Shown: positions 181 through 15,599, numbered from the whole stretch's first letter. The stretch: DNA of 63,454 nucleotides, filler included, from Octopus bimaculoides (GCF_001194135.2; 6 parts of 6 records of this genome joined end to end with filler, not necessarily neighbours in it), one strand, 5' to 3'. Numbers and translations are program-made. The notes: generated by a model from the sequence alone, not told the origin.

Positions 181-482
181 AGAAAAAAATGTGTGTAATG
201 GTCAGCGATCTATCATTGCGATACATATATATATATATATATATACAACATGGTGCTTTCATTTCCCGTCAACTAAATTCACTCACAAACTTCTGGTCAG
301 CCCTAACTACAGTCATGGACACCTGGTGGACAACATGCCGCGCAGTGAGACTGAACCCGAAACCATGTGACTGGAAAACAAGCTTCTTACCTCATACAGC
401 CATTCCTGTTTGTTTTGTTAGTCATATCATATTTTGTCTGTTGTACCACGATCATAGGATAGCAAGTGTCGATGGAAAATTC

Positions 483-757
483 TATGGAGCCCACAATAAA
501 GGCTTTGAAAGGGAAAAAAAACACTTGAAATTGGATTTAAACTGTGCCATCCTCGACGAGTGTGTCACCTCTTTTTATTTCTGACTAATATGTTCACAAA
601 ATATCCCATTTCTCTCTCCCTCTCCCTCCCTCTCTCTCTCACTCTCTCTATCTCCTCCTCACTCTCTCTCTCTCTCTTTATCTATCGTTATCTCTCTCTC
701 TTTATCTATCTATCTACCTACCTACCTACCTATCTAACTATCTACCTACCTACCTAC

Positions 758-797
<40 letters not shown>

Positions 798-1055
798 ATC
801 TATCTATCTTTATCTCTCTCTCTCTTTCTCTCTTTATCTATCTATCTATCTGTCTATCTGTTTCTTTCTTTGTGTCTTTCTTCTTTACACCCTTCTCACT
901 TTCTCTCTCTCTCTCTCTTTGTGTCTCTATGGAGCCCACAGTAAAGGTTTTGAAAGGAAAAAAAACATTTGAAATTGGATTTAAACTGTGCCATCCTCGA
1001 CGAGTGTGTCACCTTTTTTATTTCTGACTAATACGTTCTCAAAATATCCCATCTC
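483..1055 (+). repeat. About 130-bp direct repeat (483-615 and 927-1055) around a CT/ATCT microsatellite block
   Basis: Both copies read CTATGGAGCCCACA...TGTGCCATCCTCGACGAGTGTGTCACCT...AAAATATCCCAT, with a few substitutions. Confidence 0.85.
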
Positions 1056-1825: not shown

Positions 1826-2694
1826 ATGTTTATCTCTATCACTCACTCAAACCAAACCACTCTCTCTTTCACTCAATCCCCTCCTCTCTCATTAGTTCTT
1901 AGTCTTTCTTTTCGACGTATAATTTCTCTCGCGAAACTCGACCCTTTTATTTCCTTGTCTGATGAATCAAACCAGGATATGCAATTACAATCATTCTTTT
2001 TTTCTTCATATTTTTACTCCTGGCCCGTTTGTTCGAATCAAACCCTTCTATGTGTGTGTGTGTGTGTAGATTTATACAATTCTAAATATGCATTTATCGG
2101 ATTCAAATGAAATGATTCTAAACAGTTAAACCTGGATATCGCTATTATCACGTAACTATGAGTTGTCTGTGTTAATTGTTACATATACAACAACTTCACT
2201 TCATAACGTTCACACTTATATTCCTGTCGGTTTTGGATTTGTACATATCTGTTAATTAATTGANNNNNNNNNNNNNNNNNNNNNNNNNNNNNNNNNNNNN
2301 NNNNNNNNNNNNNNNNNNNNNNNNNNNNNNNNNNNNNNNNNNNNNNNNNNNNNNNNNNNNNNNNNNNNNNNNNNNNNNNNNNNNNNNNNNNNNNNNNNNN
2401 NNNNNNNNNNNNNNNNNNNNNNNNNNNNNNNNNNNNNNNNNNNNNNNNNNNNNNNNNNNNNNNNNNNNNNNNNNNNNNNNNNNNNNNNNNNNNNNNNNNN
2501 NNNNNNNNNNNNNNNNNNNNNNNNNNNNNNNNNNNNNNNNNNNNNNNNNNNNNNNNNNCACACTTATATTCCTGTCGGTTTTGGATTTGTACATATCTGT
2601 TAATTAATTGACTTCATTATATCACGAATAAGCTAATTGGTTGCGAAGAATTAATAGAAAGTTCTCAAGCATTTATATTTTATTCGGATCAAAC

Positions 2695-2818
2695 ATGACG
2701 TCTCGTGGTTATATTACTGTTGGTGGAGGGTCGTCTTGGCGTTCTTCAGGTTTGCCTAACAGACTGTTGATGTCGATGATGTTGATGATAATGATTACGT
2801 TTTCTTACACACAAGACT
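2695..2818 (+). CDS. IgSF gene, putative first coding exon (leader/signal peptide): MTSRGYITVGGGSSWRSSGLPNRLLMSMMLMIMITFSYTQD
   Basis: AAACATG start at 2695, hydrophobic stretch LLMSMMLMIMITFSY at the exon end, and a strong phase-1 donor T|GTAAGT at 2818/2819. The phase matches the acceptors of both V-like exons. Confidence 0.65.
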
Positions 2819-2865
2819 GTAAGTGAAAGACAATACATTTATTTTCTCAGCTCTTACCTCTCATC

Positions 2866-2924
<59 letters not shown>

Positions 2925-4189
2925 GTGGACACTGTATTTTGGGGTCCTTAATGTTAGTCGAGTCGATCCCTCTCCAAAAGTGACTCGGCTGATTTCTTCC
3001 AGAAAGGAAGGAGAGACTAATCGATCCAGTACGGGACTGGTATATTATTTATCTACTGCACAAGATAAATCTAAACTCAAAAGGACTTAAATTTAAAGGG
3101 CAGAACTCCATCTCCCCTATTCCCAGAATAAATGCCTCTAAAGACTCCACCAATTCGTAATTCCCATCTCAGGTTAATATATTGTTATATTGTCACCCAG
3201 TAAGTGAGAGATGCGGGGTTCAATTTCTATCACTTAACTTCTACTCCTTGTCCTTTTGCTTTATATATATTTCCATTTTCCTTATTTTACTAAGTTTATT
3301 TTTTTCTTTCCTGTCAACTCACCAACGGTTTCTCTTTGTATATATTGAAGTGAAGATAAGCGTCTGTAGTATGTTTTAGATATTACTTCAACATCTACAA
3401 CGACAATATTTGTTTTATTTTAGTTGTTTCAATTTCAAGTCATCTTTAACTCTCATCGTTCACTAGAATCGCCATTCTTTCATTACGGATTGTGTAACAT
3501 GGTGAACAAAGAAACGAAAGATCTGAGAAATCGAACGCATTTGATAATCGATGACAGCCAGTAATATTTCTGTAATAACGCAAAACTGAACTAAAAGATA
3601 TTTTTTCTATTCTATAATAATCTGTTACAAAATAAGATGAAAGGTCATTTCTGGACTGTTAATGTATTGAAGACTCGGTGTTGTAACTTCGAACTGTGAA
3701 TGCCCTAAATCTAACCCTACATTTTTATGTTTCAAACATCATGATTTATGATAACCAAAAACTGTTTCAATATTTTAATTTTTCACCCATTCTACTATTT
3801 AAAATTTCCTCAAATAAACTTTTCCAAAAGTTCAAATTTTTCTACACCAAATCTGGAAATTTTACGGTTTAAACTTTGTTACTTCCTAGGTTTGTTTTAG
3901 GGGATTTTATTTTGAAAATTTGGCCAATACTACGATTGACCCTAATATAGAATGTCTCAATATGTATTTTGTCTCTTCCTTTTCAATAATGTCACAGCAA
4001 CCCAAACAATCGTGATGTGCGGAAACCTCCGGATTTTATGCAACACCGTTGATCATAATGCATGACACTCACAGATGGCAAACCACACACACTCGCACAC
4101 ACATATATTCGATGCTGGAACGTAAAGTATGATCTTCAGTGAGATGCAGGTGTGGTGTACCTGGAAGAATAAATTTGTCGGTCTCACAT

Positions 4190-5171
4190 ACGACAGTCGA
4201 AGCAAGATGAGGAGGACATTAGTCCAGATGTGTATACAAGAACGGTAACTCTTGGTCTCTAAAATTCAGACAAAATTTCTTTCTTCTTGTTTGCTGTTTG
4301 CTGTAATTAAGATCCCTTTTCTTCCTTCTTTCCCATCATTTTCGGTATTCTCTTCTTTTCCAATTCTTCTTTTCCCTTTTCTTCTTTATCTCCAGCTAAT
4401 CCTTTCTTCTTCTTTTTCTCCATTTATATGTAATTTTCTAATAAATTCTCTCTCTTCCATTTTCATTCCTTTATAGCTATTGAAATGACCAGCCTGACAC
4501 CTGCTGATGGTTTCACAATTGGAGGAGGAAATACAATGAATATTACATGTTCATATAATATGAGAAATTTCCTTAAGTTCAAGGTAGTCAAAAACAACAG
4601 CACCGTTGTAGAGATGCAATACAGCATAAGTAATATGGTCTTTCAAATCGTGCAAACAAGAGGTTTCGATTGTACTTTCCCAGGAACTGGAACATCTGAT
4701 TTGGTTAATTGCTGGAAAAGTAACCTCACTTGCGATGATGTGGCATCATACACATGTTCGACAAACACAGTCACTTCCTCTCCAAAGTCTCTAAAAGGTC
4801 AGTTCACCATCTAAGTCATTGGTTTTCCTTATTCCACATTATTACTTTCAGAATTCAAACCGTTACAAAATTTATTACTATTATTATTATCATTACTATT
4901 ATTGAGTGAGAGAGCAGTGCATGCCATCAAAGTGATACTGGGGTAAAATATACGAACCCCATTATACCCATCATGACTACACGTCTGATAAGGGTACACC
5001 AGGCACATCCATCACAACCATATGTCCGCGACATGGCGATCTCATATCAAGATAAACAGCGCACGACCTCGCAGGTGGGGCTCAGTTAGAATTTTCTTCA
5101 GGTCGAGTAGCCCATCACGCTCAAAAGGTCCCTGAATAAGGTTTGTTTAAGGATCCTCTTCAACATCATCA

Positions 5172-5226
<55 letters not shown>

Positions 5227-5356
5227 CATATAGATTACACCTGCATGTTTCTTACAATCACGAATATCTTCATATAAAACAACGCAGAAATTTTAATGGA
5301 TGGGGTTTTTCTAAGGATGTGGGCAGTACTTGTCAGCACAGTCTTTTGGATTTCTC
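4190..5356 (+). repeat. Segmental duplication, copy 1 (partner about 7456-9035)
   Basis: Homology seen directly: 4190-4871 vs 7456-8158, and 5270-5356 vs 8942-9034. Boundaries approximate. Confidence 0.85.
4477..4797 (+). CDS. IgSF gene, V-like Ig domain exon, copy 1 (321 nt, phase 1-1)
   Basis: Long polypyrimidine tract ending TTATAG| at 4476 and donor AAG|GTCAGT at 4797/4798. The open frame has a B-strand ITC and an F-strand D-x-A-x-Y-x-C motif (CDDVASYTC). Confidence 0.85.
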
Positions 5357-5690
5357 AGGGATATTCCTCACTTGGGATGTTATCTAGATGTTTCTGGCAA
5401 CCCATTTTTATCATACCTAGGGCATGTACAATAATGGAAACAGTTCTCACTTTAAGATGCCGCATCTTTTGTATTTCAATCTCCAAGTCCTTATAATTAC
5501 TTTATTTGTCAAATTCCTTGGCATATATATTTTTATCAGTGGGAACACTTATATCTATAAGTCTACGAGTATATTCTTCCTTGTCTTTAATGACTATGTC
5601 TGGTCGATTAGCCTTGATCGTTCTGTCAGTGTTGGCTTGAAAATCTCAGAGGATAGTGACATTCTTACCTTCAACGACTGGTCCATGATA
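5290..5690 (-). mobile_element. Non-LTR retrotransposon remnant, restriction-like endonuclease C-terminus (R4/Dong-like)
   Basis: Minus-strand translation includes TIL*DFQANTDRTIKANRPDIVIKDK...LIDISVPTDKNIYAKEFDK...YKDLEIEIQKM...ALG, the RPD...D...E-x-x-K pattern of RLE elements. Disrupted. Confidence 0.75.
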
Positions 5691-5912
5691 ATGTCCATAC
5701 CAATAAGAAGGTGTGCTGGTTTTTCGTAATGTTTATATATTTTCCAATACAAAAACTGTCCTACACTGTCGTGTCAATTTTTGTATTCATTTGGTGTCAA
5801 CCCATGACATCCCGAGACGAGAGGTGAACAACATTTTAGGTTTGTATCATCACTATCAATGCATCCATGCAATATATTGTAATGTCATTATTGTTCTCAC
5901 ATTTCTTTTCAG

Positions 5913-6212
5913 TGAAATCTTCTATTAAGAACATGACACGCGTTGACTCTCACTAGGATGGAAACAAGATATCTACATTCAAGTGTACAGCAAATGTTGC
6001 ATTACCATCTACAGCTCCTGTTAAATTTCAATGGAAAATACAACTCGATAATCGTCAAGATCCGATTTATGAAGACAAAGAGGCCATCGTTCCAAATTCT
6101 ACAGAGTGTTATGTTGTAGCTTCTTCACAATATCGGCATAACGATACGTTCGGTGGCCTCGAAAAGATTTCATGTACAGTATTTGGCCAAACATTAGATC
6201 TCTCGTATACAA
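5913..6212 (+). pseudogene. IgSF gene, C2/C-like Ig domain exon (300 nt, phase 1-1) with one in-frame TAG at 5954-5956
   Basis: Acceptor TTTCTTTTCAG| and donor A|GTAAGC. Translation: (V)KSSIKNMTRVDSH*DGNKISTFKCTANVALPSTAPVKFQWKIQLDNRQDPIYEDKEAIVPNSTECYVVASSQYRHNDTFGGLEKISCTVFGQTLDLSYT. It shows the Ig C...W...C spacing. Not in the ORF track. Confidence 0.75.
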
Positions 6213-7234
6213 GTAAGCAAATATTTTTGATCTTGCACTGCTTAATCTATTTATATTTTTTCTTCATATATGGTGAAATTTGTTGTAGGCCTGGTGTTGT
6301 GTTACTAGAAATAGATCGCTGCAGTTTATCTCCTCGTTGACAGAAAACATTGTTGCATTTCTAAATGTTTATGGTTGAGCGGTTAAGTATTGAATGTTTT
6401 TATAAAAGTCTTAACCTCAAACCCAAACAGAAAAATATGTCATAAATTTATGATGGCCCATCCTAACATTACGGCAGACTACTTCTTTCAATAACAATAT
6501 AAATTACTTACAGCTTTTAGCTAATCTCGAAAACAAGTCACGATTTTTTGAGGTCACCCTCCTAGAATTAACAATATTCGTGTGGTTCGTAGGTTTAATG
6601 TTTCTATTCGTAATCTGGCATTTGTTTCTGTGAATATGAAGGCGAAACTCAGCGCCATTAGAATGCACTGCTGCTTTGTTAGTCCGAAAGATGAGGAATG
6701 GTTGATCATTTTATGCAGGAAGATGGAAGATATCAATCGGTGTAGAACAAAGCAAGGAGAATGAATTGGGAGCAAACAAGAAGTACAGACGACAGAAAAT
6801 AATCAGTACATATTCAGAGTTTACATAAGCTTCTCAGTAGGCTTAGCATAGCGATGAACGCCTTATGGCAGTCTTTCATGTAAAACAAAGATCAAGGGAA
6901 AAAAGTACAATAACAGCACGACCACATCCTCTACCTCATTTATCCACAGTACAATGAAATAATGAAAAGAGGCAGTAACAGTAAAGTGTAGTATTATAGC
7001 TAGTGGATATGAGTTCAATTCCTGAGTTAGTCAAGCTTATATAACAGTTCTGGTTAAAGCTTTGTAAACAAGACCAAAATTAATAAAGACCCTAATTAAT
7101 AATGAGAAAATCCCTGATTCATGTGCAAGACAGAACGAGGATGATCTAACTAAATGGTAGGTTACCAGTCTCTTGAAATGTTATTTAATGGGAGAGGTAC
7201 CTGGAGATCTCCAGAGGATACAACAGCTGGAACA

Positions 7235-7455
7235 TTCTTTTCTTTTCTATTCGAGGCACAAGCCCGAAATTTTGGTAGGAGGTGGCCATTCGATTAGATC
7301 GACCTCAGTATGCAACTGGTACTTAATTTATCGACTCCGAAAGTATGAAAAGCAAAGTCGACCTCGGCGGAATTTGAACTGAGAACGTAAAGACGGACGA
7401 AATACCGCTAAGCATTTCGCCCAGCGTGTTAAACTTTCTGCCAGCCCGTCGCCTT
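7235..7455 (-). mobile_element. SINE family B (…TTCTGAGTTCAAATTCCGCCGAGGTCGACTTTG…GGTCGATAAATTAAGTACCAGTT…)
   Basis: Reverse complement of the family seen at 21460-21672. Lies immediately upstream of duplication copy 2. Confidence 0.85.
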
Positions 7456-8165
7456 ACGACAGCCGAAGCATTGCGACTATAATGAGCAAGATGAGGAGGA
7501 AATTAGTCCAGATATGTATACACGAACAGTAACTCTTGGTCTCTGAAATTCAGATAAAATTTGTTTCTTCTTGTTTGCTGTTTGCTGTAATTAAGATCCC
7601 TTTTCTTCCTTCTTTCCCATCATTTTCGGTATTCTCTTCTTTTCCAATTCTTCTTTTCCCTTTTCTTCCTCTTTATCTCCAACTAATCCTTTCTTCTTCT
7701 TTTTCTCCATTTATATGTAATTTTCTAATAAATTATCTCTCTTCCATTTTCATTCCTTTATAGTTATTGAAATGACCAGCCTGACACCTGCTGATGGTTT
7801 CACAATTGGAGGAAGAAATACAATGACTATTACATGTTCATATAATATGATGAATTTCCGTACGTTCAACATCATAAAAAACAACAGCACCGTTGTAGAG
7901 ATTCAAAAGTACGTACCTTATGATATACTTGGAATCATGCAAACCGGACGTTTCGATTGTACATTACAAAGAACTGGAACACCTGGTTTGGTTAAATGTT
8001 CGAAAAGTAACCTCACTTGCTATGATGTGGCATCATACACATGTTCGACAAACACAGTCACTTCCTCTCCAAAGTCTCTAAAAGGTCAGTTCACCATCTA
8101 AGTCATTGGTTTTCCTTATTCCACATTATTACTTTCAGAATTCAAACCGTTACAAAATATATTAC

Positions 8166-8227
<62 letters not shown>

Positions 8228-8743
8228 NNNNNNNNNNNNNNNNNNNNNNNNNNNNNNNNNNNNNNNNNNNNNNNNNNNNNNNNNNNNNNNNNNNNNNNNN
8301 NNNNNNNNNNNNNNNNNNNNNNNNNNNNNNNNNNNNNNNNNNNNNNNNNNNNNNNNNNNNNNNNNNNNNNNNNNNNNNNNNNNNNNNNNNNNNNNNNNNN
8401 NNNNNNNNNNNNNNNNNNNNNNNNNNNNNNNNNNNNNNNNNNNNNNNNNNNNNNNNNNNNNNNNNNNNNNNNNNNNNNNNNNNNNNNNNNNNNNNNNNNN
8501 NNNNNNNNNNNNNNNNNNNNNNNNNNNNNNNNNNNNNNNNNNNNNNNNNNNNNNNNNNNNNNNNNNNNNNNNNNNNNNNNNNNNNNNNNNNNNNNNNNNN
8601 NNNNNNNNNNNNNNNNNNNNNNNNNNNNNNNNNNNNNNNNNNNNNNNNNNNNNNNNNNNNNNNNNNNNNNNNNNNNNNNNNNNNNNNNNNNNNNNNNNNN
8701 NAAAGCATTTTTTTCTTTCATGATCTTTGACAACTACATTATT

Positions 8744-8790
<47 letters not shown>

Positions 8791-9034
8791 TTTTATTATT
8801 ATTATTATTATTATAGATTTAGCCTGCAGTTTCCTTACAATTACTTGCCGAGACACACCCACCATTCTAGGGCGAGTGAAGGATAGGGGACGTTGCAGTG
8901 TCATTGAAAGTTTGGGGAGGGGGAATGTCAGGGACAGTAGCGAATATTTTCATATAAAACAACACAGAAATTTTAATGGATGGGGTTTTTCTAAGGATGT
9001 GGGCAGTACTTGTCAACACAGTCTTTTGGATTTC

Positions 9035-9035
<1 letters not shown>
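7456..9035 (+). repeat. Segmental duplication, copy 2 (includes N gap 8228-8701)
   Basis: Begins right after a SINE tail (ACGACAGCCGAAGCA...) and ends at ...TTGGATTTCT followed by (GT)n. Confidence 0.8.
7764..8084 (+). CDS. IgSF gene, V-like Ig domain exon, copy 2 (321 nt, phase 1-1)
   Basis: Paralog of 4477-4797 with the same length and splice sites (TTATAG|, AAG|GTCAGT). Open frame, all five Cys conserved. Confidence 0.85.
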
Positions 9036-9072
<37 letters not shown>

Positions 9073-10620
9073 TGTGTGTGTGCGTGCGTGCGTGCTGATT
9101 GTTTAGACCGACCTATTTTATGTAGGAATGAATTCGATTTGCAAAAAAATATGTTAAGTAATTCAAAGTCGGTGCTCCAGCATGGCCACTGTCAAATGAG
9201 TGAAACAGATAAAAGAGTAATTCTTAACTATTAGCTTCGATTTAATGAAATCTATCTCAATGACCATATTCTTTAAGCAAAACTTCAAAAAGCAGACTGA
9301 TTTTCAAATGCATTTATCTATAATAATTTTACATTGGTTTACATATAAAATACATATATATATATATAATACAGTCTCTTAATATATTTCCTGTAACAAT
9401 AATGTCTTTTAAGCAATGTTAAATCTCTGAACGAGGTATTAAAATGTTTTTTAACTTTTAAATCAAAACATTTTTGATGTAGTTCTTAACTAATTTTACT
9501 TTTAACTCTTTTATTAACTTAACAAAAGTCCACTTTAACCTGATGAAACTATGTCAACATATTCAGACTGCCTCTATATAATACTGTAACTCCAAATGTG
9601 GAATTGTTGATATTGTATTTCTGCAGTTAGTGGCTAACAGGAGTTATAATTAACAAGCTTGATATCTAAAAATTTATAAGCATCTTGTAAAATCTTGTAC
9701 GGGTGAAAATTCATTTCAATCGCTTGTCGATACCAAATTCAGTAAACGGAAGTATAAATCTGGAAATATAAATAATAAATAAATATATGAGAAATCATTT
9801 GAATGGGGATAAGACAACTAAGTAGTGTCGGTGGGTGGAACCTAAATCTAAGAGGGATAAACAGAACGATAAAAGAAAGATCACAGGAGAACACACCAAC
9901 AGGGGAAGTAACCAACATTTCGACTAGGACGAGACTCGGGTTTGAGAGAAGTAACACCAAAGAATATATAAATATACAGAGATGTATTGATATGTATTTA
10001 GGCTCAATGTAAAACTAGGCCCACGAGGGTATTTTGTGTTGCTGACGATGTGTATAGGCTTCTTGTGTGTTTGTGTGAACTGAGAGACTTGATCGAAGAG
10101 TTTGGTGAATAAACTGGAGTATTCAAGGTTATCAATAGTACTTTGGTTCATCTCCAGTAAGAACAAATTCCAACAAAAGCAAAATGCGAACCAGATGAAC
10201 GGGAGGTGGGTATGTGCGGGTCCTAATATTGTATTCACCGAGATGCACGCGAAATTCCAGTTGTCTCTGATGGTCGTAGCGAGGTAAGGAGTGAAGATTA
10301 TATCTTGCAAATCCAATTTCATTTTTACCTAAGGTGCAATACTAACGCTTACATCGATGTGTTGGTCACAATGGTCAAGCCTTAACTGGACGGGTGCGAC
10401 CAAGAAAACACTTGCATGTATTCTAGCATGACTTTGTTCTCACCCACGTCGTTCTTGGTTCTCGAGCAGCTGTTGATCGTGAAATTTCGTTATCTTTTTT
10501 GCCCTTAGATGAAGTCTCGTAGACTACAGATGCCAAACCAAGACGTTTTCCCCTTTTTAAGATGGATTTTATTGCAGCATTCAACATATATACATACATA
10601 TATGTCTATGTATGTGGGAT

Positions 10621-10957
10621 GACACCCTTCGGTCATGAATGACCCTGGGATTGCACCTAGGAAGTTACCCTCACAGGTACAAGTCCGGACAAGGTTGTTT
10701 GTGGAAGACCAGCAGTCGCCCATGCACACCGGCCTCCCCTCTCTACGCCACCAGTGTTATCCAAGAGAAAGGCAAAGGGGCCGATACAGCTCGGCACCAG
10801 TGACGTCGCAACTCATTTCCACAGCTGAGTTAACTGGAGCAATGTGAAATAAAGTGTCTTACTCAAGGACACAACACCCAGCCTGGTCCGCGAATCGAAC
10901 TCACAACCTCACGATCGTAAGCTCAGCGCTCTAACCACTGAACCACGCGCCTTCACT
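10621..10957 (-). mobile_element. tRNA-derived SINE, family C
   Basis: Reverse-complement homolog of 28321-28660, with a tRNA-like head at the 10957 end. Confidence 0.85.
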
Positions 10958-11460: not shown

Positions 11461-12106
11461 TGATGGCTTAGGTCTGTAGTCTTCGAATTAGCTTTTTCCT
11501 TTTTGGTTTTGAGGCGCCTAATTTCTCAAGATTGGTATTTAGGCAATATGTTACATATCCCAGGGCCACAATAATTAAAGTTATAAATCTTAACTCGTAA
11601 TCGGGATAGAGTAACTGCAGATTTCTCAATAGTTCGGCGTATGTATGTATTTAATTCAACATGTGAAACTGCTAATCAAGATACGTTTGCTCTCTTACCG
11701 ATTTCTTTTCCTTCTCCATTGATTTCTTTATTCGTTCCTTTTTGCCAAAGAACATAGACATGACACCTTGTTTGTTGTTACCTCTCCTGTCACAGTCTTT
11801 TTTTTCTTCATTTTATTTTTCGTACAATTAAGAAAACTAGGGAGCGGAGACATAAGAAGGGAAATGAAAAATAAAACGAAATAGAAAGTAATTTATTTTT
11901 ACAAACCTTCGTTATCAACTCTGTGCAAAACGGAATGTTGCTAACGAGAAATTGCAACAACCAGAAGCGGAAGAATGAGATTGACAGTTAGAATCCATTT
12001 AGAATACAATATACCAGAACGAGCGCCGCTAGCAACTGTAAGATAAAAAAATGTTTGTGTCAAGGAAAGTGTTTGATCTGAATATTTGAATGAAAATTTA
12101 CGGCCA

Positions 12107-12206
12107 NNNNNNNNNNNNNNNNNNNNNNNNNNNNNNNNNNNNNNNNNNNNTTAATTAATTAANNNNNNNNNNNNNNNNNNNNNNNNNNNNNNNNNNNNNN
12201 NNNNNN
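12107..12206. other. Artificial assembly linker (44N-TTAATTAATTAA-44N)
   Basis: Exactly 100 nt. The palindromic core gives stop codons in all six frames. Confidence 0.95.
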
Positions 12207-13545: not shown

Positions 13546-14654
13546 TTCTATATTTAAGAGATGAGGAATTATGTACNNNNNNNNNNNNNNNNNNNNNNNN
13601 NNNNNNNNNNNNNNNNNNNNNNNNNNNNNNNNNNNNNNNNNNNNNNNNNNNNNNNNNNNNNNNNNNNNNNNNNNNNNNNNNNNNNNNNNNNNNNNNNNNN
13701 NNNNNNNNNNNNNNNNNNNNNNNNNNNNNNNNNNNNNNNNNNNNNNNNNNNNNNNNNNNNNNNNNNNNNNNNNNNNNNNNNNNNNNNNNNNNNNNNNNNN
13801 NNNNNNNNNNNNNNNNNNNNNNNNNNNNNNNNNNNNNNNNNNNNNNNNNNNNTATATATATACCCATGAGCATATGGTGTAGTGGTTAAGAGCACAGGCT
13901 ACTAACCCCAAGATTCCAAGTTCGATTCCAGACGGTGATCTGAATAATAATAATAATAATAATGATAATAATAATGGTTTCAAATTTTGGCTCAAGGCCA
14001 ACAATTTCAGGGCTGGGTAAATTGATTACATCAACTTCAGAGCTCAACTGGTACTATTTTATCAATCCCAAGAGGATGGAAGGCAAAATTATCCCCAGCG
14101 GTAGTATTATTAAAATAGCATTTTGTGTATCTTACTTGAATATATATATTCTGAGGAAAGCCACACGGCAGTGATATTCATCTCAAGAAAGCTTCACATA
14201 TAGATGCATAGTGCTGAGGAGCACAGAAACACAGTGGAAACTGGCAAGAAGTTTCCTCACTACTGCTGGACAATTCTCATCTGCTGATGATACGCTTCTG
14301 TACTTTTTAGCACGACACATGACTATGAGAAGCTTAATTACTACAATTAGAACACATCACCTGAAATATGATGTAGGAATATTCTAAATACCATAGATAT
14401 TGATGAAGCCCTGGTTGCGTTTTCGCAATGCAAAACCTGCTCCTACTTGTTTGGACTTGAACTAGCCAGGAAGCATCTGATTGAGCATATGAAATGCTCA
14501 GTAGGTAGTCGAAACCTGTAGCTAACAGTTGCATACTGTCCTTCTCTTCCAGATTGTGAAAGCTTACCATAACGTTTAATTTAAATACAGTGAAATTTTA
14601 AGACTTCATTTTTTTATGGGCATATATGGGTTAAAACAATGATAATAATAATCC

Positions 14655-14850
14655 TTTTTACTAAAGGCAGTAGGCCTGAAATTTTGGGGGAGGGGATAAG
14701 TTGATTACAGGTACTTATTTTATTGATCCTTGAAGAGATAAAAGGCAAAATCAACCTCTGCGGGATTTGAACTCAGAATGTAAAGATGGATGTAATGGAT
14801 GAAGCATTTTGCCCTGCATGCTCATGATTTGGCCAGCTTGCCATCTTAAA
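14655..14850 (-). mobile_element. SINE family B copy (diverged)
   Basis: Shared core sequence. Confidence 0.7.
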
Positions 14851-15599
14851 CTGGTGCATTCAAACAAAGTCCTTAGCAGTATTTGTTCCACCCAAGTTGG
14901 AAACATGATCTAAAACAAAATAAGTAAATAAACATTGAACCGAGATGGGGTTCCATTTGTGTGGGATGCTGAGTTGAAGGAGCTAGCCTCATAGCTGCAA
15001 GCGAATGGCTAATGATTTTGTGAAGATAAAATGATAAATTAGCAGGAACTAATTTGAAAAGATAACATGACAGGTGTTCTGTATTGGAATTGGTAAGTCA
15101 GTCACCCAGTAAATACTAGATATATTGTTCAAATCTCACCAGTTTCTCGTCTCTGTCTCAAAATTGGGTTTATAATGTTTTGAGAGATAACTCCTATTTT
15201 TGATGCCAAAATGTTTGGCTAGATCAACTGGACAGAGAACTTAAAATGTCAATATCCAGCTGGAATAATTATGATGAACTCTCAGTCAATTCTAGCTCTA
15301 TTTTTTAGTGTGAAGCTGTGCAGTTTTTCTAATCTCAACCAAGAAGAGCAAGCCATCAGAATCATTTTTGCTTTGGACAAAATGTTTAGTGGCATTTCAT
15401 CTGGATTTAATGTTCTCAGTTCAAATACCACTGAGATCAACTTTGCCTTTCATCCTTTTGGGGGTCAATAAAATAAGAACCAGTTGAGCAATGGTAAGTC
15501 CTGGGTTTGATACAATTAACGAAGTCCTGGTCTACAGATTTCAGGCCTTGTGCTTATCATAGAAAGTGGAAGGAATTATGAAAGCCTCTTCTTCTTCTC

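What the first reader, a model, noticed from the sequence alone, without database searches (positions are those of the whole stretch)
2695..8084. One leader feeding symmetric phase-1 cassettes (L-V1-C-V2): possible alternative V-exon usage
Seen: the leader donor and all three Ig exons are phase 1, so any exon can be skipped or swapped in frame. I found no second leader between 6212 and 7764 and no second C exon between 9035 and the linker at 12107. The duplication therefore copied the V exon and its introns, not the whole gene. Established: Dscam1 generates receptor diversity through arrays of duplicated, mutually exclusive Ig exons. Inference: L-V1-C and L-V2-(downstream exons) could be alternative products, a minimal switchable-V system. 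A tandem V-C-V-(C) multidomain protein is the alternative reading.
Basis: partly seen in the sequence, partly recalled or inferred. Interest (0 to 1): 0.7.

Follow-up and report, generated by a model that had tools for sequence, protein, structure and literature searches.

The report
Rearranged octopus Ig-like gene, no V switch
This is LOC106878954, a rearranged member of an octopus-only family of small two-domain immunoglobulin-like surface proteins; its two V exons are spliced one after the other into the same RNA rather than used as alternatives, and the reference copy carries a premature stop codon.

Summary
The four exons are real. L is 2695-2818, V1 4477-4797, C 5913-6212 and V2 7764-8084. 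All are AG/GT-bounded and phase 1.

RNA from 8 assembled runs and 3 raw-read runs shows only the serial junctions L>V1, V1>C and C>V2. No L>V2, V1>V2 or L>C junction was seen.

NCBI accordingly annotates a 162-aa product, XP_014783817.1 of Octopus bimaculoides. The codon is polymorphic: TAG, TAT and TTG occur in different animals. TAT carriers still join C to V2, which leaves an open V-C-V reading frame.

DNA depth shows V1, C and V2 are each single copy, so this is not a haplotype artefact. Intron homology to neighbouring paralogues indicates V2 is the remnant of a second tandem gene fused to the first. It is not a simple V-exon copy.

V1 and V2 are about 97% identical in their introns and exon ends but only 80% in the exon centre.

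The family is restricted to Octopus and is normally L-V-C-tail. AlphaFold and Foldseek confirm an Ig fold although Pfam gives no hit.

Verdict: an ordinary, rearranged, structurally polymorphic member of a tandem Ig-like cluster.

The parts
2695..2818 (+). Exon 1: start codon plus leader (41 codons + 1 base; long n-region then the hydrophobic stretch LLMSMMLMIMITF). Phase-1 GT donor at 2819. The 5'UTR extends upstream of 2560.
   Evidence: translation, splice sites. Junction 2818>4477 in 8 RNA runs. Homologous to the leaders of P0001 and P0002. NCBI CDS start is here.
4477..4797 (+). V1 exon, 321 nt, phase 1-1. V-set Ig-like domain with the motif L.C.DVASYTC.
   Evidence: 44-50% identity to paralogue V domains. 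AF2 model of P0018 has pLDDT 85-94 over the domain. Foldseek top hits are antibody VH and nanobody domains, TM about 0.65-0.71.
5598..5710 (+). Cryptic exon inside a high-copy repeat in intron 2. Its donor at 5710|GT is spliced to the C exon in some transcripts. The 5' end is approximate.
   Evidence: X43 loose end before 5911 reads TGGTCCATGATAATGTCCATACCAATAAGA, 113 nt. X28 contig covers 5624-5708. DNA depth is 1,500-17,000x over 5395-5772.
5913..6212 (+). C exon, 300 nt, phase 1-1. C-like Ig domain (TFKC...FQW...ISCTVF).
   Evidence: 36-42% identity to paralogue C domains. Junctions 4797>5913 and 6212>7764.
5954..5956 (+). In-frame TAG in the linker before the C domain. It is polymorphic: TAG, TAT (Tyr) and TTG (Leu).
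   Evidence: TAG: the reference, DNA X6 and X3, RNA X19, X13, X28, X43, X39. TAT: DNA X1 and X9, RNA X25 and X38 (5/5 raw reads). TTG: RNA X26, X27, X30.
6213..6412 (+). 5' part of intron 3, homologous to the C-to-tail intron of the paralogues. This is the gene-A side of the inferred fusion.
   Evidence: BLAST matches 5855-6412 to L002 12833-13405 and 6244-6412 to L001 14585-14740.
6447..7763 (+). 3' part of intron 3, homologous to the inner and 3' part of intron 1 (leader-to-V) of the paralogues, interrupted by a SINE-like repeat at about 7240-7473. This is the gene-B side of the inferred fusion.
   Evidence: BLAST matches 6447-7236 to L001 11594-12406 (87%) and 7023-8178 to L002 10688-11849. 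DNA depth exceeds 10^6 at 7285-7473.
7764..8084 (+). V2 exon, 321 nt, phase 1-1. It is always found downstream of C in RNA.
   Evidence: A single-copy V2-specific DNA unitig is present in 4 individuals.
4201..4903 (+). Duplicated block, copy 1 (copy 2 is 7485-8190). Introns and exon ends are about 97% identical (14 differences in 495 nt). The exon centre 4527-4734 is 79.8% identical (42 differences in 208 nt).
   Evidence: Fisher p = 2.7e-13. In the centre dN is 0.245 and dS 0.18.
7485..8190 (+). Duplicated block, copy 2.
8228..8701 (.). Assembly gap directly after V2. It is flanked by sequence homologous to the V1-C intron (8085-8190 and 8941-9035). The exon that follows V2 in RNA is not in the assembled sequence.
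   Evidence: The X43 loose end behind 8084 reads TCATTAGACTGCGGCCATGCGTTGAAGAAT, 197 nt. It is absent from the window and from L001-L004.
11941..12042 (-). Tail exon (…ASGARSGILYSKWILTVNLILPLLVVAISR*) of a convergent family gene. It has a cttacag acceptor, a TAG stop and a downstream AATAAA. It does not belong to the + strand gene.
   Evidence: tblastn gives 70% identity to P0002 residues 254-286. The matching minus-strand C exon (13963-13655) and V exon (15126-14767) lie beyond the window in L004.

Best explanation
The window holds LOC106878954 of Octopus bimaculoides (chromosome CM046620.1, about 43.41 Mb). It belongs to an Octopus-restricted, tandemly arrayed family whose normal gene is four exons: leader, V-like Ig, C-like Ig, and a hydrophobic tail that is GPI-signal-like or transmembrane.

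Inferred history. This copy is a fusion of two neighbouring family genes. Gene A kept its leader, V1, C and the first 200 nt or so of its C-to-tail intron. Gene B kept the last 1.3 kb or so of its leader-to-V intron, V2, and part of its V-to-C intron. The tail of A and the leader of B were lost. The flanks of V1 and V2 were later homogenised by gene conversion while the exon centres stayed diverged.

Shown. All exons are phase 1-1, and the C donor splices to the V2 acceptor. The unit is transcribed from one promoter and spliced serially as L-V1-C-V2-(a further exon missing from the assembly). It is not spliced alternatively.

Consequences by allele.
- In the reference allele, a TAG before the C domain ends translation at 162 aa. 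The product would be a leader plus a single V domain, and the mRNA would carry a long multi-exon 3'UTR.
- In TAT and TTG alleles the frame stays open through C and V2.
- In one further structural allele (X26/X27), C splices to a Thr-rich stalk-like exon instead of V2.

Overall this is a rearranged, structurally polymorphic and probably dispensable cluster member. It is not a V-switching device.
For: Identity and location:
- The window is 100% identical to GCA_001194135.2, directly downstream of LOC106878948.
- The product is XP_014783817.1.

Serial splicing:
- Junctions 2818>4477, 4797>5913 and 6212>7764 are seen.
- In the runs checked at each junction, each junction class is represented by a single contig type. 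Leader 3' end plus C-first-base goes to V. C 3' end plus T-first-base goes to V. V 3' end goes to C, or in X43 the cryptic repeat exon does.

Not an assembly artefact:
- V1-specific, C and V2-specific DNA unitigs have equal depth. X1: 65.6/54.9/55.1. X3: 54.9/75.6/55. X6: 21.8/25.4/25.2. X9: 9/14.5/14.

Stop codon:
- The stop and its alleles are documented.
- X38, a TAT carrier (5/5 reads), still shows 6212>7764 and V2 coverage.

Fusion:
- Intron homologies are, read against the paralogue exon maps.
- Canonical paralogues have one V, one C and a tail.
- There is no + strand tail in the window. The only tail exon is on the minus strand and belongs to a convergent gene.

Mosaic identity of V1 and V2.

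Ig fold.
Against: - RNA evidence is mostly from assembled contigs, which drop minor variants. Isoforms below roughly a quarter of the main form could be missed. In the raw-read call the junction table was crowded by microsatellite joints, so the absence of 2818>7764 there is not quantified.
- X43 shows V2 and C but no V1-specific contig, although a leader-to-V junction contig is present. This is not fully explained. Most of its signal seems to come from repeat-exon>C>V2 transcripts.
- The fusion history is inferred from homology with only two paralogue loci. Insertion of a V-containing fragment into the C-to-tail intron would give a similar picture.
- Exons downstream of V2, and downstream of the X26 C allele, are not in the assembly. 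The 3' end of the gene is therefore unknown.
Confidence: 0.72

Rival explanations
1. V1 and V2 are alternative cassettes fed by one leader (L-V1-C versus L-V2-…), forming a minimal switchable-V system analogous to Dscam mutually exclusive exons.
For: All exons are phase 1-1, so skipping would stay in frame. There is only one leader. The V centres are strongly diverged. Some runs hold only V1-specific or only V2-specific contigs: X25, X26 and X27 versus X43.
Against: - No L>V2, V1>V2 or L>C junction contig was found in any run examined. Leader junctions always carry the V1-type first base and C junctions always carry the V2-type first base.
- C lies between the two V exons and is joined to both.
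- The V1-only runs differ genetically, with other C alleles and a different exon after C. The difference is allelic, not a splicing choice.
- In the reference allele translation stops before V2.
Confidence: 0.05
2. The V-C-V unit is a selected, functional new architecture: a three- or four-Ig receptor in animals with TAT or TTG. The TAG is then just a null allele, and the locus is not decaying.
For: - The frame is open through L-V1-C-V2 in the TAT and TTG alleles, and at least 10 codons into the next exon for the TAT reconstruction.
- TAT carrier X38 expresses the C>V2 junction.
- Multi-domain gene models exist in O. vulgaris relatives: P0008 (five V-C repeats), P0011, P0015 (C-V order) and P0010 (V-C-C).
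- dN/dS is about 1.3 in the V centre.
Against: - The nonsense allele is common: 2 of 4 DNA runs and 5 of 10 RNA runs.
- No membrane anchor or tail exon follows V2 on the + strand. The exon that does follow is not family-like: it reads VIRLRPCVEE… and is absent from the assembly.
- The O. vulgaris multi-domain models may themselves be merged tandem genes.
- dS in the centre is also high (0.18), so the pattern need not reflect positive selection.
Confidence: 0.2
3. Assembly artefact. V1 and V2 are two alleles of one V exon, stacked in tandem in a gap-ridden scaffold.
For: Ns flank the region (2264-2558, 8228-8701). The flanks are near-identical. The gap at 2264-2558 is itself bordered by an identical 53-nt overlap.
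Against: Both V-specific unitigs have the same depth as single-copy C in four individuals. Raw RNA reads cross 6212>7764 with up to 62 nt on the shorter side. V2's upstream intron differs in content from V1's.
Confidence: 0.03

Closest known systems
Octopus LOC106878948 / LOC106882738 / LOC106878953 family (uncharacterised 'Ig-like domain-containing' proteins of O. bimaculoides, O. sinensis and O. vulgaris)
   Same: The leader is homologous (MTSRGYITVG…). The V domain is 44-50% identical and the C domain 36-42% identical. It shares the phase 1-1 exon plan, lies in the same chromosomal cluster, and sits immediately downstream of LOC106878948.
   Different: Canonical members have one V, one C and a hydrophobic tail exon on the same strand. 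This gene has V-C-V, no assembled tail, and a nonsense codon in the reference allele.
Dscam1-type mutually exclusive alternative Ig exon arrays
   Same: Duplicated Ig-coding exons of equal length and phase lie within one transcription unit.
   Different: Here a constitutive exon (C) separates the two copies, both copies are included serially, and no transcript with only the downstream copy was seen. Docking and selector RNA elements were not looked for.
Structurally polymorphic Ig-like receptor clusters such as KIR and LILR (own knowledge: tandem genes, fusion genes from unequal crossing-over, common null alleles, gene conversion)
   Same: It shares a tandem cluster, an apparent gene fusion, a common nonsense allele, several structural alleles, and a mosaic identity pattern suggestive of gene conversion.
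   Different: There is no sequence relationship beyond the Ig fold. Function, ligand and expression pattern are unknown. An immune role is purely conjectural.
Variable-cassette plus shared constant exon loci (clustered protocadherins, UGT1A)
   Same: In the neighbouring gene LOC106878953, NCBI isoforms X1 and X2 use two different L-V-C cassettes joined to one tail exon. A tail-less cassette splicing into what lies downstream is also what happens in the window.
   Different: In the window the C donor lands on the next V exon rather than on a shared tail, so a serial rather than alternative product results. The LOC106878953 models were not checked against reads here.

Membership tests
Immunoglobulin superfamily (V-set-like plus C-like tandem domains) | Beta-sandwich Ig fold | tested here: met
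   The AF2 model of the window's own 162-aa product has domain pLDDT 85-94. Its Foldseek PDB top hits are VH and nanobody domains (E about 1e-4, prob 1.0, TM about 0.65-0.71). The paralogue P0002 model matches two-domain Fab, TCR and CD4 chains at E about 1e-7.
Immunoglobulin superfamily (V-set-like plus C-like tandem domains) | B-strand and F-strand cysteines, and a D-x-A/G-x-Y-x-C motif before the F-strand Cys | tested here: met
   ITC…DVASYTC is present in V1 and V2, and TFKC…FQW…ISCTVF in C. These columns are invariant in the family alignment.
Immunoglobulin superfamily (V-set-like plus C-like tandem domains) | Match to curated Ig profile HMMs (Pfam ig, V-set, I-set, C2-set) | tested here: not met
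   There are 0 Pfam hits at E<=10 for V1, V2 and C. A family profile against PDB sequences gives only weak titin, FcγR and PD-L1 matches, best E 0.0016. The family is too diverged for sequence models.
Immunoglobulin superfamily (V-set-like plus C-like tandem domains) | One domain per exon with phase 1-1 boundaries | tested here: met
   Boundaries are verified by RNA junctions.
Octopus L-V-C-tail family (LOC106878948-like) | Homologous leader, V and C exons in that order | tested here: met
   The profile search returns the window product P0018 at E = 3e-51.
Octopus L-V-C-tail family (LOC106878948-like) | Single V and single C followed by a hydrophobic tail exon on the same strand | tested here: not met
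   A second V follows C. There is no + strand tail between 8085 and 12106 or in the assembled sequence out to window coordinate 15322. The only tail exon is on the minus strand. One allele (X26/X27) does continue from C into a non-V, Thr-rich exon.
Mutually exclusive alternative exon array (Dscam-like) | Each mature transcript contains exactly one of the duplicated exons | tested here: not met
   L>V1, V1>C and C>V2 occur in the same runs. No L>V2, V1>V2 or L>C junction was found. Sensitivity is limited to contigs and a few raw reads.
Mutually exclusive alternative exon array (Dscam-like) | Duplicated exons adjacent, with competing RNA pairing (docking and selector sites) | not tested
   The exons are separated by the constitutive C exon. 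RNA pairing elements were not searched for.

The most novel reading that the evidence does not exclude
The Octopus-only L-V-C cluster on this chromosome might be a rapidly diversifying, structurally polymorphic recognition-receptor cluster. In this reading, V-domain centres are kept different while their flanks are homogenised by gene conversion. Cassettes that lack their own tail are expressed by splicing into downstream cassettes or a shared tail exon, as NCBI models for LOC106878953. Null and open alleles would segregate, as with TAG/TAT/TTG here. That would make it a cephalopod counterpart, by convergence, of KIR/LILR-like or protocadherin-like organisation.
Probability: 0.15. Interest if true: 0.65.

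Novelty: new member of a known kind. Interest (0 to 1): 0.27.

Why it matters
As submitted, a minimal switchable-V system in a mollusc would have been notable. The data show ordinary serial splicing of a fused tandem duplicate, so that claim falls.

What remains is of modest value.
- It documents an uncharacterised, Octopus-restricted two-Ig family whose Ig nature is visible only by fold.
- It corrects the reading of LOC106878954: the 162-aa model is one allele of a polymorphic nonsense site.
- It flags the cluster as structurally and allelically very variable. That matters for anyone studying cephalopod cell-surface recognition, or using this gap-rich assembly for expression or editing analyses.

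Tried and rejected
1. RNA editing rescuing the stop (UAG>UGG): no A>G at 5955 was flagged among 15 raw reads in TAG carrier X39. The other alleles are A>T and G>T DNA variants. Rejected.

2. A second C exon hidden downstream: tblastn finds none on the + strand, and DNA depth of C equals that of each V. Rejected for identical copies. A diverged copy inside the 8228-8701 gap cannot be excluded.

3. Haplotype-stacking artefact: rejected by DNA depth and by raw reads spanning the junction.

4. Locating the exons that follow V2 (TCATTAGACTG…) and the X26 C allele (CTCCTACAAT…): neither is in the window or in L001-L004, even allowing up to 6 mismatches.

5. Recent conversion of a V centre from P0002, P0001 or the convergent gene's V: the centres are only 54-70% identical to those. 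Rejected for these donors.

It succeeded later through P0018.

8. tRNA and Rfam scans of the window found nothing.

9. Literature searches by LOC identifiers returned nothing.

10. A V2>C junction (back-splice or exon repetition) was considered because in X13 and X30 the shared V 3' unitig runs unbranched into C. V1 and V2 share their last 63 nt, and contig building clips tips, so this cannot be phased. It is left open.

Full report
WHAT THE SEQUENCE IS

The window is 100% identical to Octopus bimaculoides assembly GCA_001194135.2, chromosome CM046620.1. It starts about 5.4 kb downstream of LOC106878948. The gene that starts at 2695 is LOC106878954, whose annotated product is XP_014783817.1, 162 aa. 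The piece contains true assembly gaps at 2264-2558 and 8228-8701.

CHECK OF THE OBSERVATION

- L, 2695-2818, 124 nt;
- V1, 4477-4797, 321 nt;
- C, 5913-6212, 300 nt;
- V2, 7764-8084, 321 nt.

All have AG/GT borders and phase 1. They are expressed and spliced. Junctions 2818>4477, 4797>5913 and 6212>7764 appear in RNA contigs of eight runs. Junction 6212>7764 also appears in raw reads of three further runs, with 6, 19 and 6 reads and up to 62 nt on the shorter side. No second leader and no + strand C or tail exon exist elsewhere in the piece.

This is why NCBI's product stops at 162 aa.

IS IT Ig?

Pfam finds nothing, even at E<=10. A family profile gives only weak PDB sequence matches to titin, FcγR and PD-L1 Ig domains.

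Three lines nevertheless support an Ig fold:
- The classical B/F cysteines and the DVASYTC motif are present and invariant in the family.
- The AlphaFold model of the window's own product folds confidently as a V-type sandwich, and its best PDB matches are VH and nanobody domains.
- The complete paralogue P0002 folds as V-like plus C-like domains plus a C-terminal helix, matching Fab, TCR and CD4 chains.

THE FAMILY

A profile search of 1.84 billion representatives gives 41 proteins at E<1e-10. Every one that was looked up comes from O. bimaculoides, O. sinensis or O. vulgaris, mostly in tandem on one chromosome. Beyond that level only generic Ig proteins appear.

Canonical members are 270-300 aa and have four exons: leader, V, C, and a hydrophobic tail. 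One type has a transmembrane segment plus a cytoplasmic tail instead. None is functionally characterised, and the literature search was empty.

TEST OF THE SWITCH HYPOTHESIS

V1 and V2 differ at their very first base (C versus T), so junction contigs can be assigned to one or the other.
- In the runs checked at this junction, the leader 3' end is joined to the C-type (V1) start (X26; X43, X13, X30, X19).
- In the reference-type runs, the C-exon 3' end is joined to the T-type (V2) start.
- What precedes C is either the V 3' end or, in X43, a cryptic repeat-derived exon. It is never the leader.

No L>V2, V1>V2 or L>C junction was seen.

Sensitivity is limited. Logan contigs drop minor paths, and the raw-read junction table was crowded by microsatellite joints.

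NOT AN ARTEFACT

The unitigs compared are V1-specific (4497-4764), C (5652-6192) and V2-specific (7784-8051). In DNA contigs of four animals they have matching depth:

| Run | V1 | C | V2 |
|---|---|---|---|
| X1 | 65.6 | 54.9 | 55.1 |
| X3 | 54.9 | 75.6 | 55 |
| X6 | 21.8 | 25.4 | 25.2 |
| X9 | 9 | 14.5 | 14 |

V1, C and V2 are therefore each single-copy tandem elements. They are not stacked alleles, and there is no second identical C.

THE STOP CODON IS POLYMORPHIC

| Codon | DNA runs | RNA runs |
|---|---|---|
| TAG | X6, X3 | X19, X13, X28, X43, X39 (0/15 alternative reads) |
| TAT (Tyr) | X1, X9 | X25, X38 (5/5 reads) |
| TTG (Leu) | none seen | X26, X27, X30 |

 The variants are DNA changes, not A-to-I editing. 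X38, a TAT carrier, still shows the C>V2 junction and V2 coverage. In such animals the mRNA has an open L-V1-C-V2 frame.

The TTG haplotype carries six further substitutions in C, four of them non-synonymous. In X26 and X27 it also carries an in-frame 12-nt insertion, and a different next exon follows C. That exon reads GCTCCTACAATAAAAACTACG…, translating to APTIKTTTGR, which is Thr-rich and stalk-like. No V2 contig was recovered in those runs. The same 12-nt variant is present in DNA of X6. The locus therefore has several structural alleles.

ORIGIN OF V2

The near-identical duplication covers only 4201-4903/7485-8190 and 5261-5355/8941-9035. Comparison with the introns of P0001 and P0002 shows more:
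- 6213-6412 is C-to-tail-intron sequence.
- 6447-7236 and 7023-7763 are leader-to-V-intron sequence, part of which V1's own upstream intron lacks.

The simplest reading is two tandem family genes fused by a deletion. The deletion removed the tail of the first and the leader of the second. This is inferred, not shown.

Downstream of V2 the V-to-C-intron homology ends at 9035. From about 9240 onward the sequence is the inverted 3' flank of a convergent family gene. That gene's tail exon is at 12042-11941 (-), and its C and V exons lie beyond the window. V2 thus has no family-type partner exons on its strand in the assembly.

In X43 (and, by a branch one base after 8084, in X19), V2 continues into an exon reading TCATTAGACTGCGG…. 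That exon is not in the assembled sequence.

MOSAIC DIVERGENCE OF V1 AND V2

- Flanking introns and exon ends differ at 14 of 495 positions (97.2% identity).
- The exon centre differs at 42 of 208 positions (79.8% identity). Fisher p = 2.7e-13.
- In the centre dN is 0.245 and dS 0.18.
- The differences run from the B-C loop through strand E, with nine consecutive replaced residues at the C'-C'' region. Strands F and G are identical.
- The centres are still closer to each other than to other paralogues, which are 54-70% identical.

Synonymous divergence is also high. The pattern therefore fits older duplicates whose flanks were homogenised by gene conversion at least as well as it fits positive selection. 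I cannot separate the two.

HOW IT MOST LIKELY WORKS

There is one promoter and leader. Exons are spliced serially because every donor and acceptor is phase 1 and the C donor has lost its own tail acceptor. The outcome depends on the allele:
- a truncated secreted single-V product, or an NMD substrate (inference), from TAG;
- a V-C-V product with an unknown C-terminus from TAT and TTG;
- a canonical-looking V-C-stalk product from the X26/X27 allele.

Nothing indicates regulated choice between V1 and V2.

UNRESOLVED

(a) X43 lacks V1-specific contigs although it has a leader junction.

(b) In X13 and X30 the shared V 3' unitig continues only into C, so the graph has no visible exit after V2. 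A V2>C back-splice or tip clipping could explain this.

(c) X25 (TAT) and X13/X28 (TAG) belong to one study. If that study is the single-animal tissue series mentioned in 10.1101/2022.06.24.497555, the alleles would be expressed tissue-specifically. The run identities are coded, so this is unverified.

VERDICT

The object is an ordinary, rearranged and polymorphic member of an uncharacterised Octopus Ig-like tandem family.

Noticed in passing
window 5954-5956: Three alleles occur at one codon (TAG, TAT, TTG) in different animals. TAG is one step from each of the other two, so the nonsense allele may be an evolutionary intermediate or may have arisen more than once.
   Followed up: partly
window 2211-2263 and 2559-2611: The N gap at 2264-2558 is bordered by an identical 53-nt sequence on both sides. 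The two contig ends probably overlap and the gap is spurious. The X26 RNA contig extends 268 nt upstream of 2560.
   Followed up: partly
window 5598-5710 (and 5624-5940): A high-copy repeat in intron 2 supplies a cryptic exon spliced to C (X43, X28). In X13 and X19 unspliced contigs run from the intron into C. Some C-V2 RNA therefore lacks the leader and V1.
   Followed up: partly
window 12042-11941 (-); L004 20955-22444 (window coordinates 13649-15138, -): A convergent family gene (V, C and an intact tail exon with stop and AATAAA) lies on the minus strand. It is not among the called genes of the locus.
   Followed up: partly
L003 378-713, 1988-2317, 10001-11751, 12536-12640: NCBI isoforms X1 and X2 of the upstream neighbour LOC106878953 use two different L-V-C cassettes joined to the same tail exon. 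The upstream cassette has no tail of its own and skips about 10 kb. This resembles a variable-cassette plus shared-constant-exon layout. It was not checked against reads.
   Followed up: partly
window 8084 onward; 6212 onward in the X26/X27 allele: Two expressed downstream exons are absent from the assembly. TCATTAGACTGCGGCCATGCGTTGAAGAAT… follows V2, and CTCCTACAATAAAAACTACGACTGGAAGA… follows the variant C. They probably lie in gaps or in haplotype-specific sequence.
   Followed up: yes
window 8022-8084 to 5913: In X13 and X30 the unitig for the V 3' end shared by V1 and V2 has a depth of about V1 plus V2 and continues unbranched into C. This could reflect a V2>C back-splice (a 621-nt C-V2 circle) or be a contig-building effect.
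   Followed up: partly
window 6163-7006: DNA of X6 holds a second version of the C 3' end plus intron. It has 17 substitutions and a 12-nt in-frame insertion after 6188. At 6305-6941 only the non-reference version is seen. The reference here may be a mosaic of haplotypes.
   Followed up: partly
window 481-916 and 926-1357: A roughly 440-bp tandem duplication (79% identity) lies in the CT-rich, microsatellite-laden upstream region. A related copy lies upstream of LOC106878948.
   Followed up: no
window about 10620-10950 (-): A SINE-like element has a tRNA-like head when read by eye, but ARAGORN and Rfam report nothing. Related copies are present in L001.
   Followed up: partly
runs X25 versus X13/X28 (same study): One study yields only the TAT allele in one sample and only the TAG allele in others. 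If the samples are tissues of one animal, this would be allele-specific expression. The identity of the coded study could not be verified.
   Followed up: no
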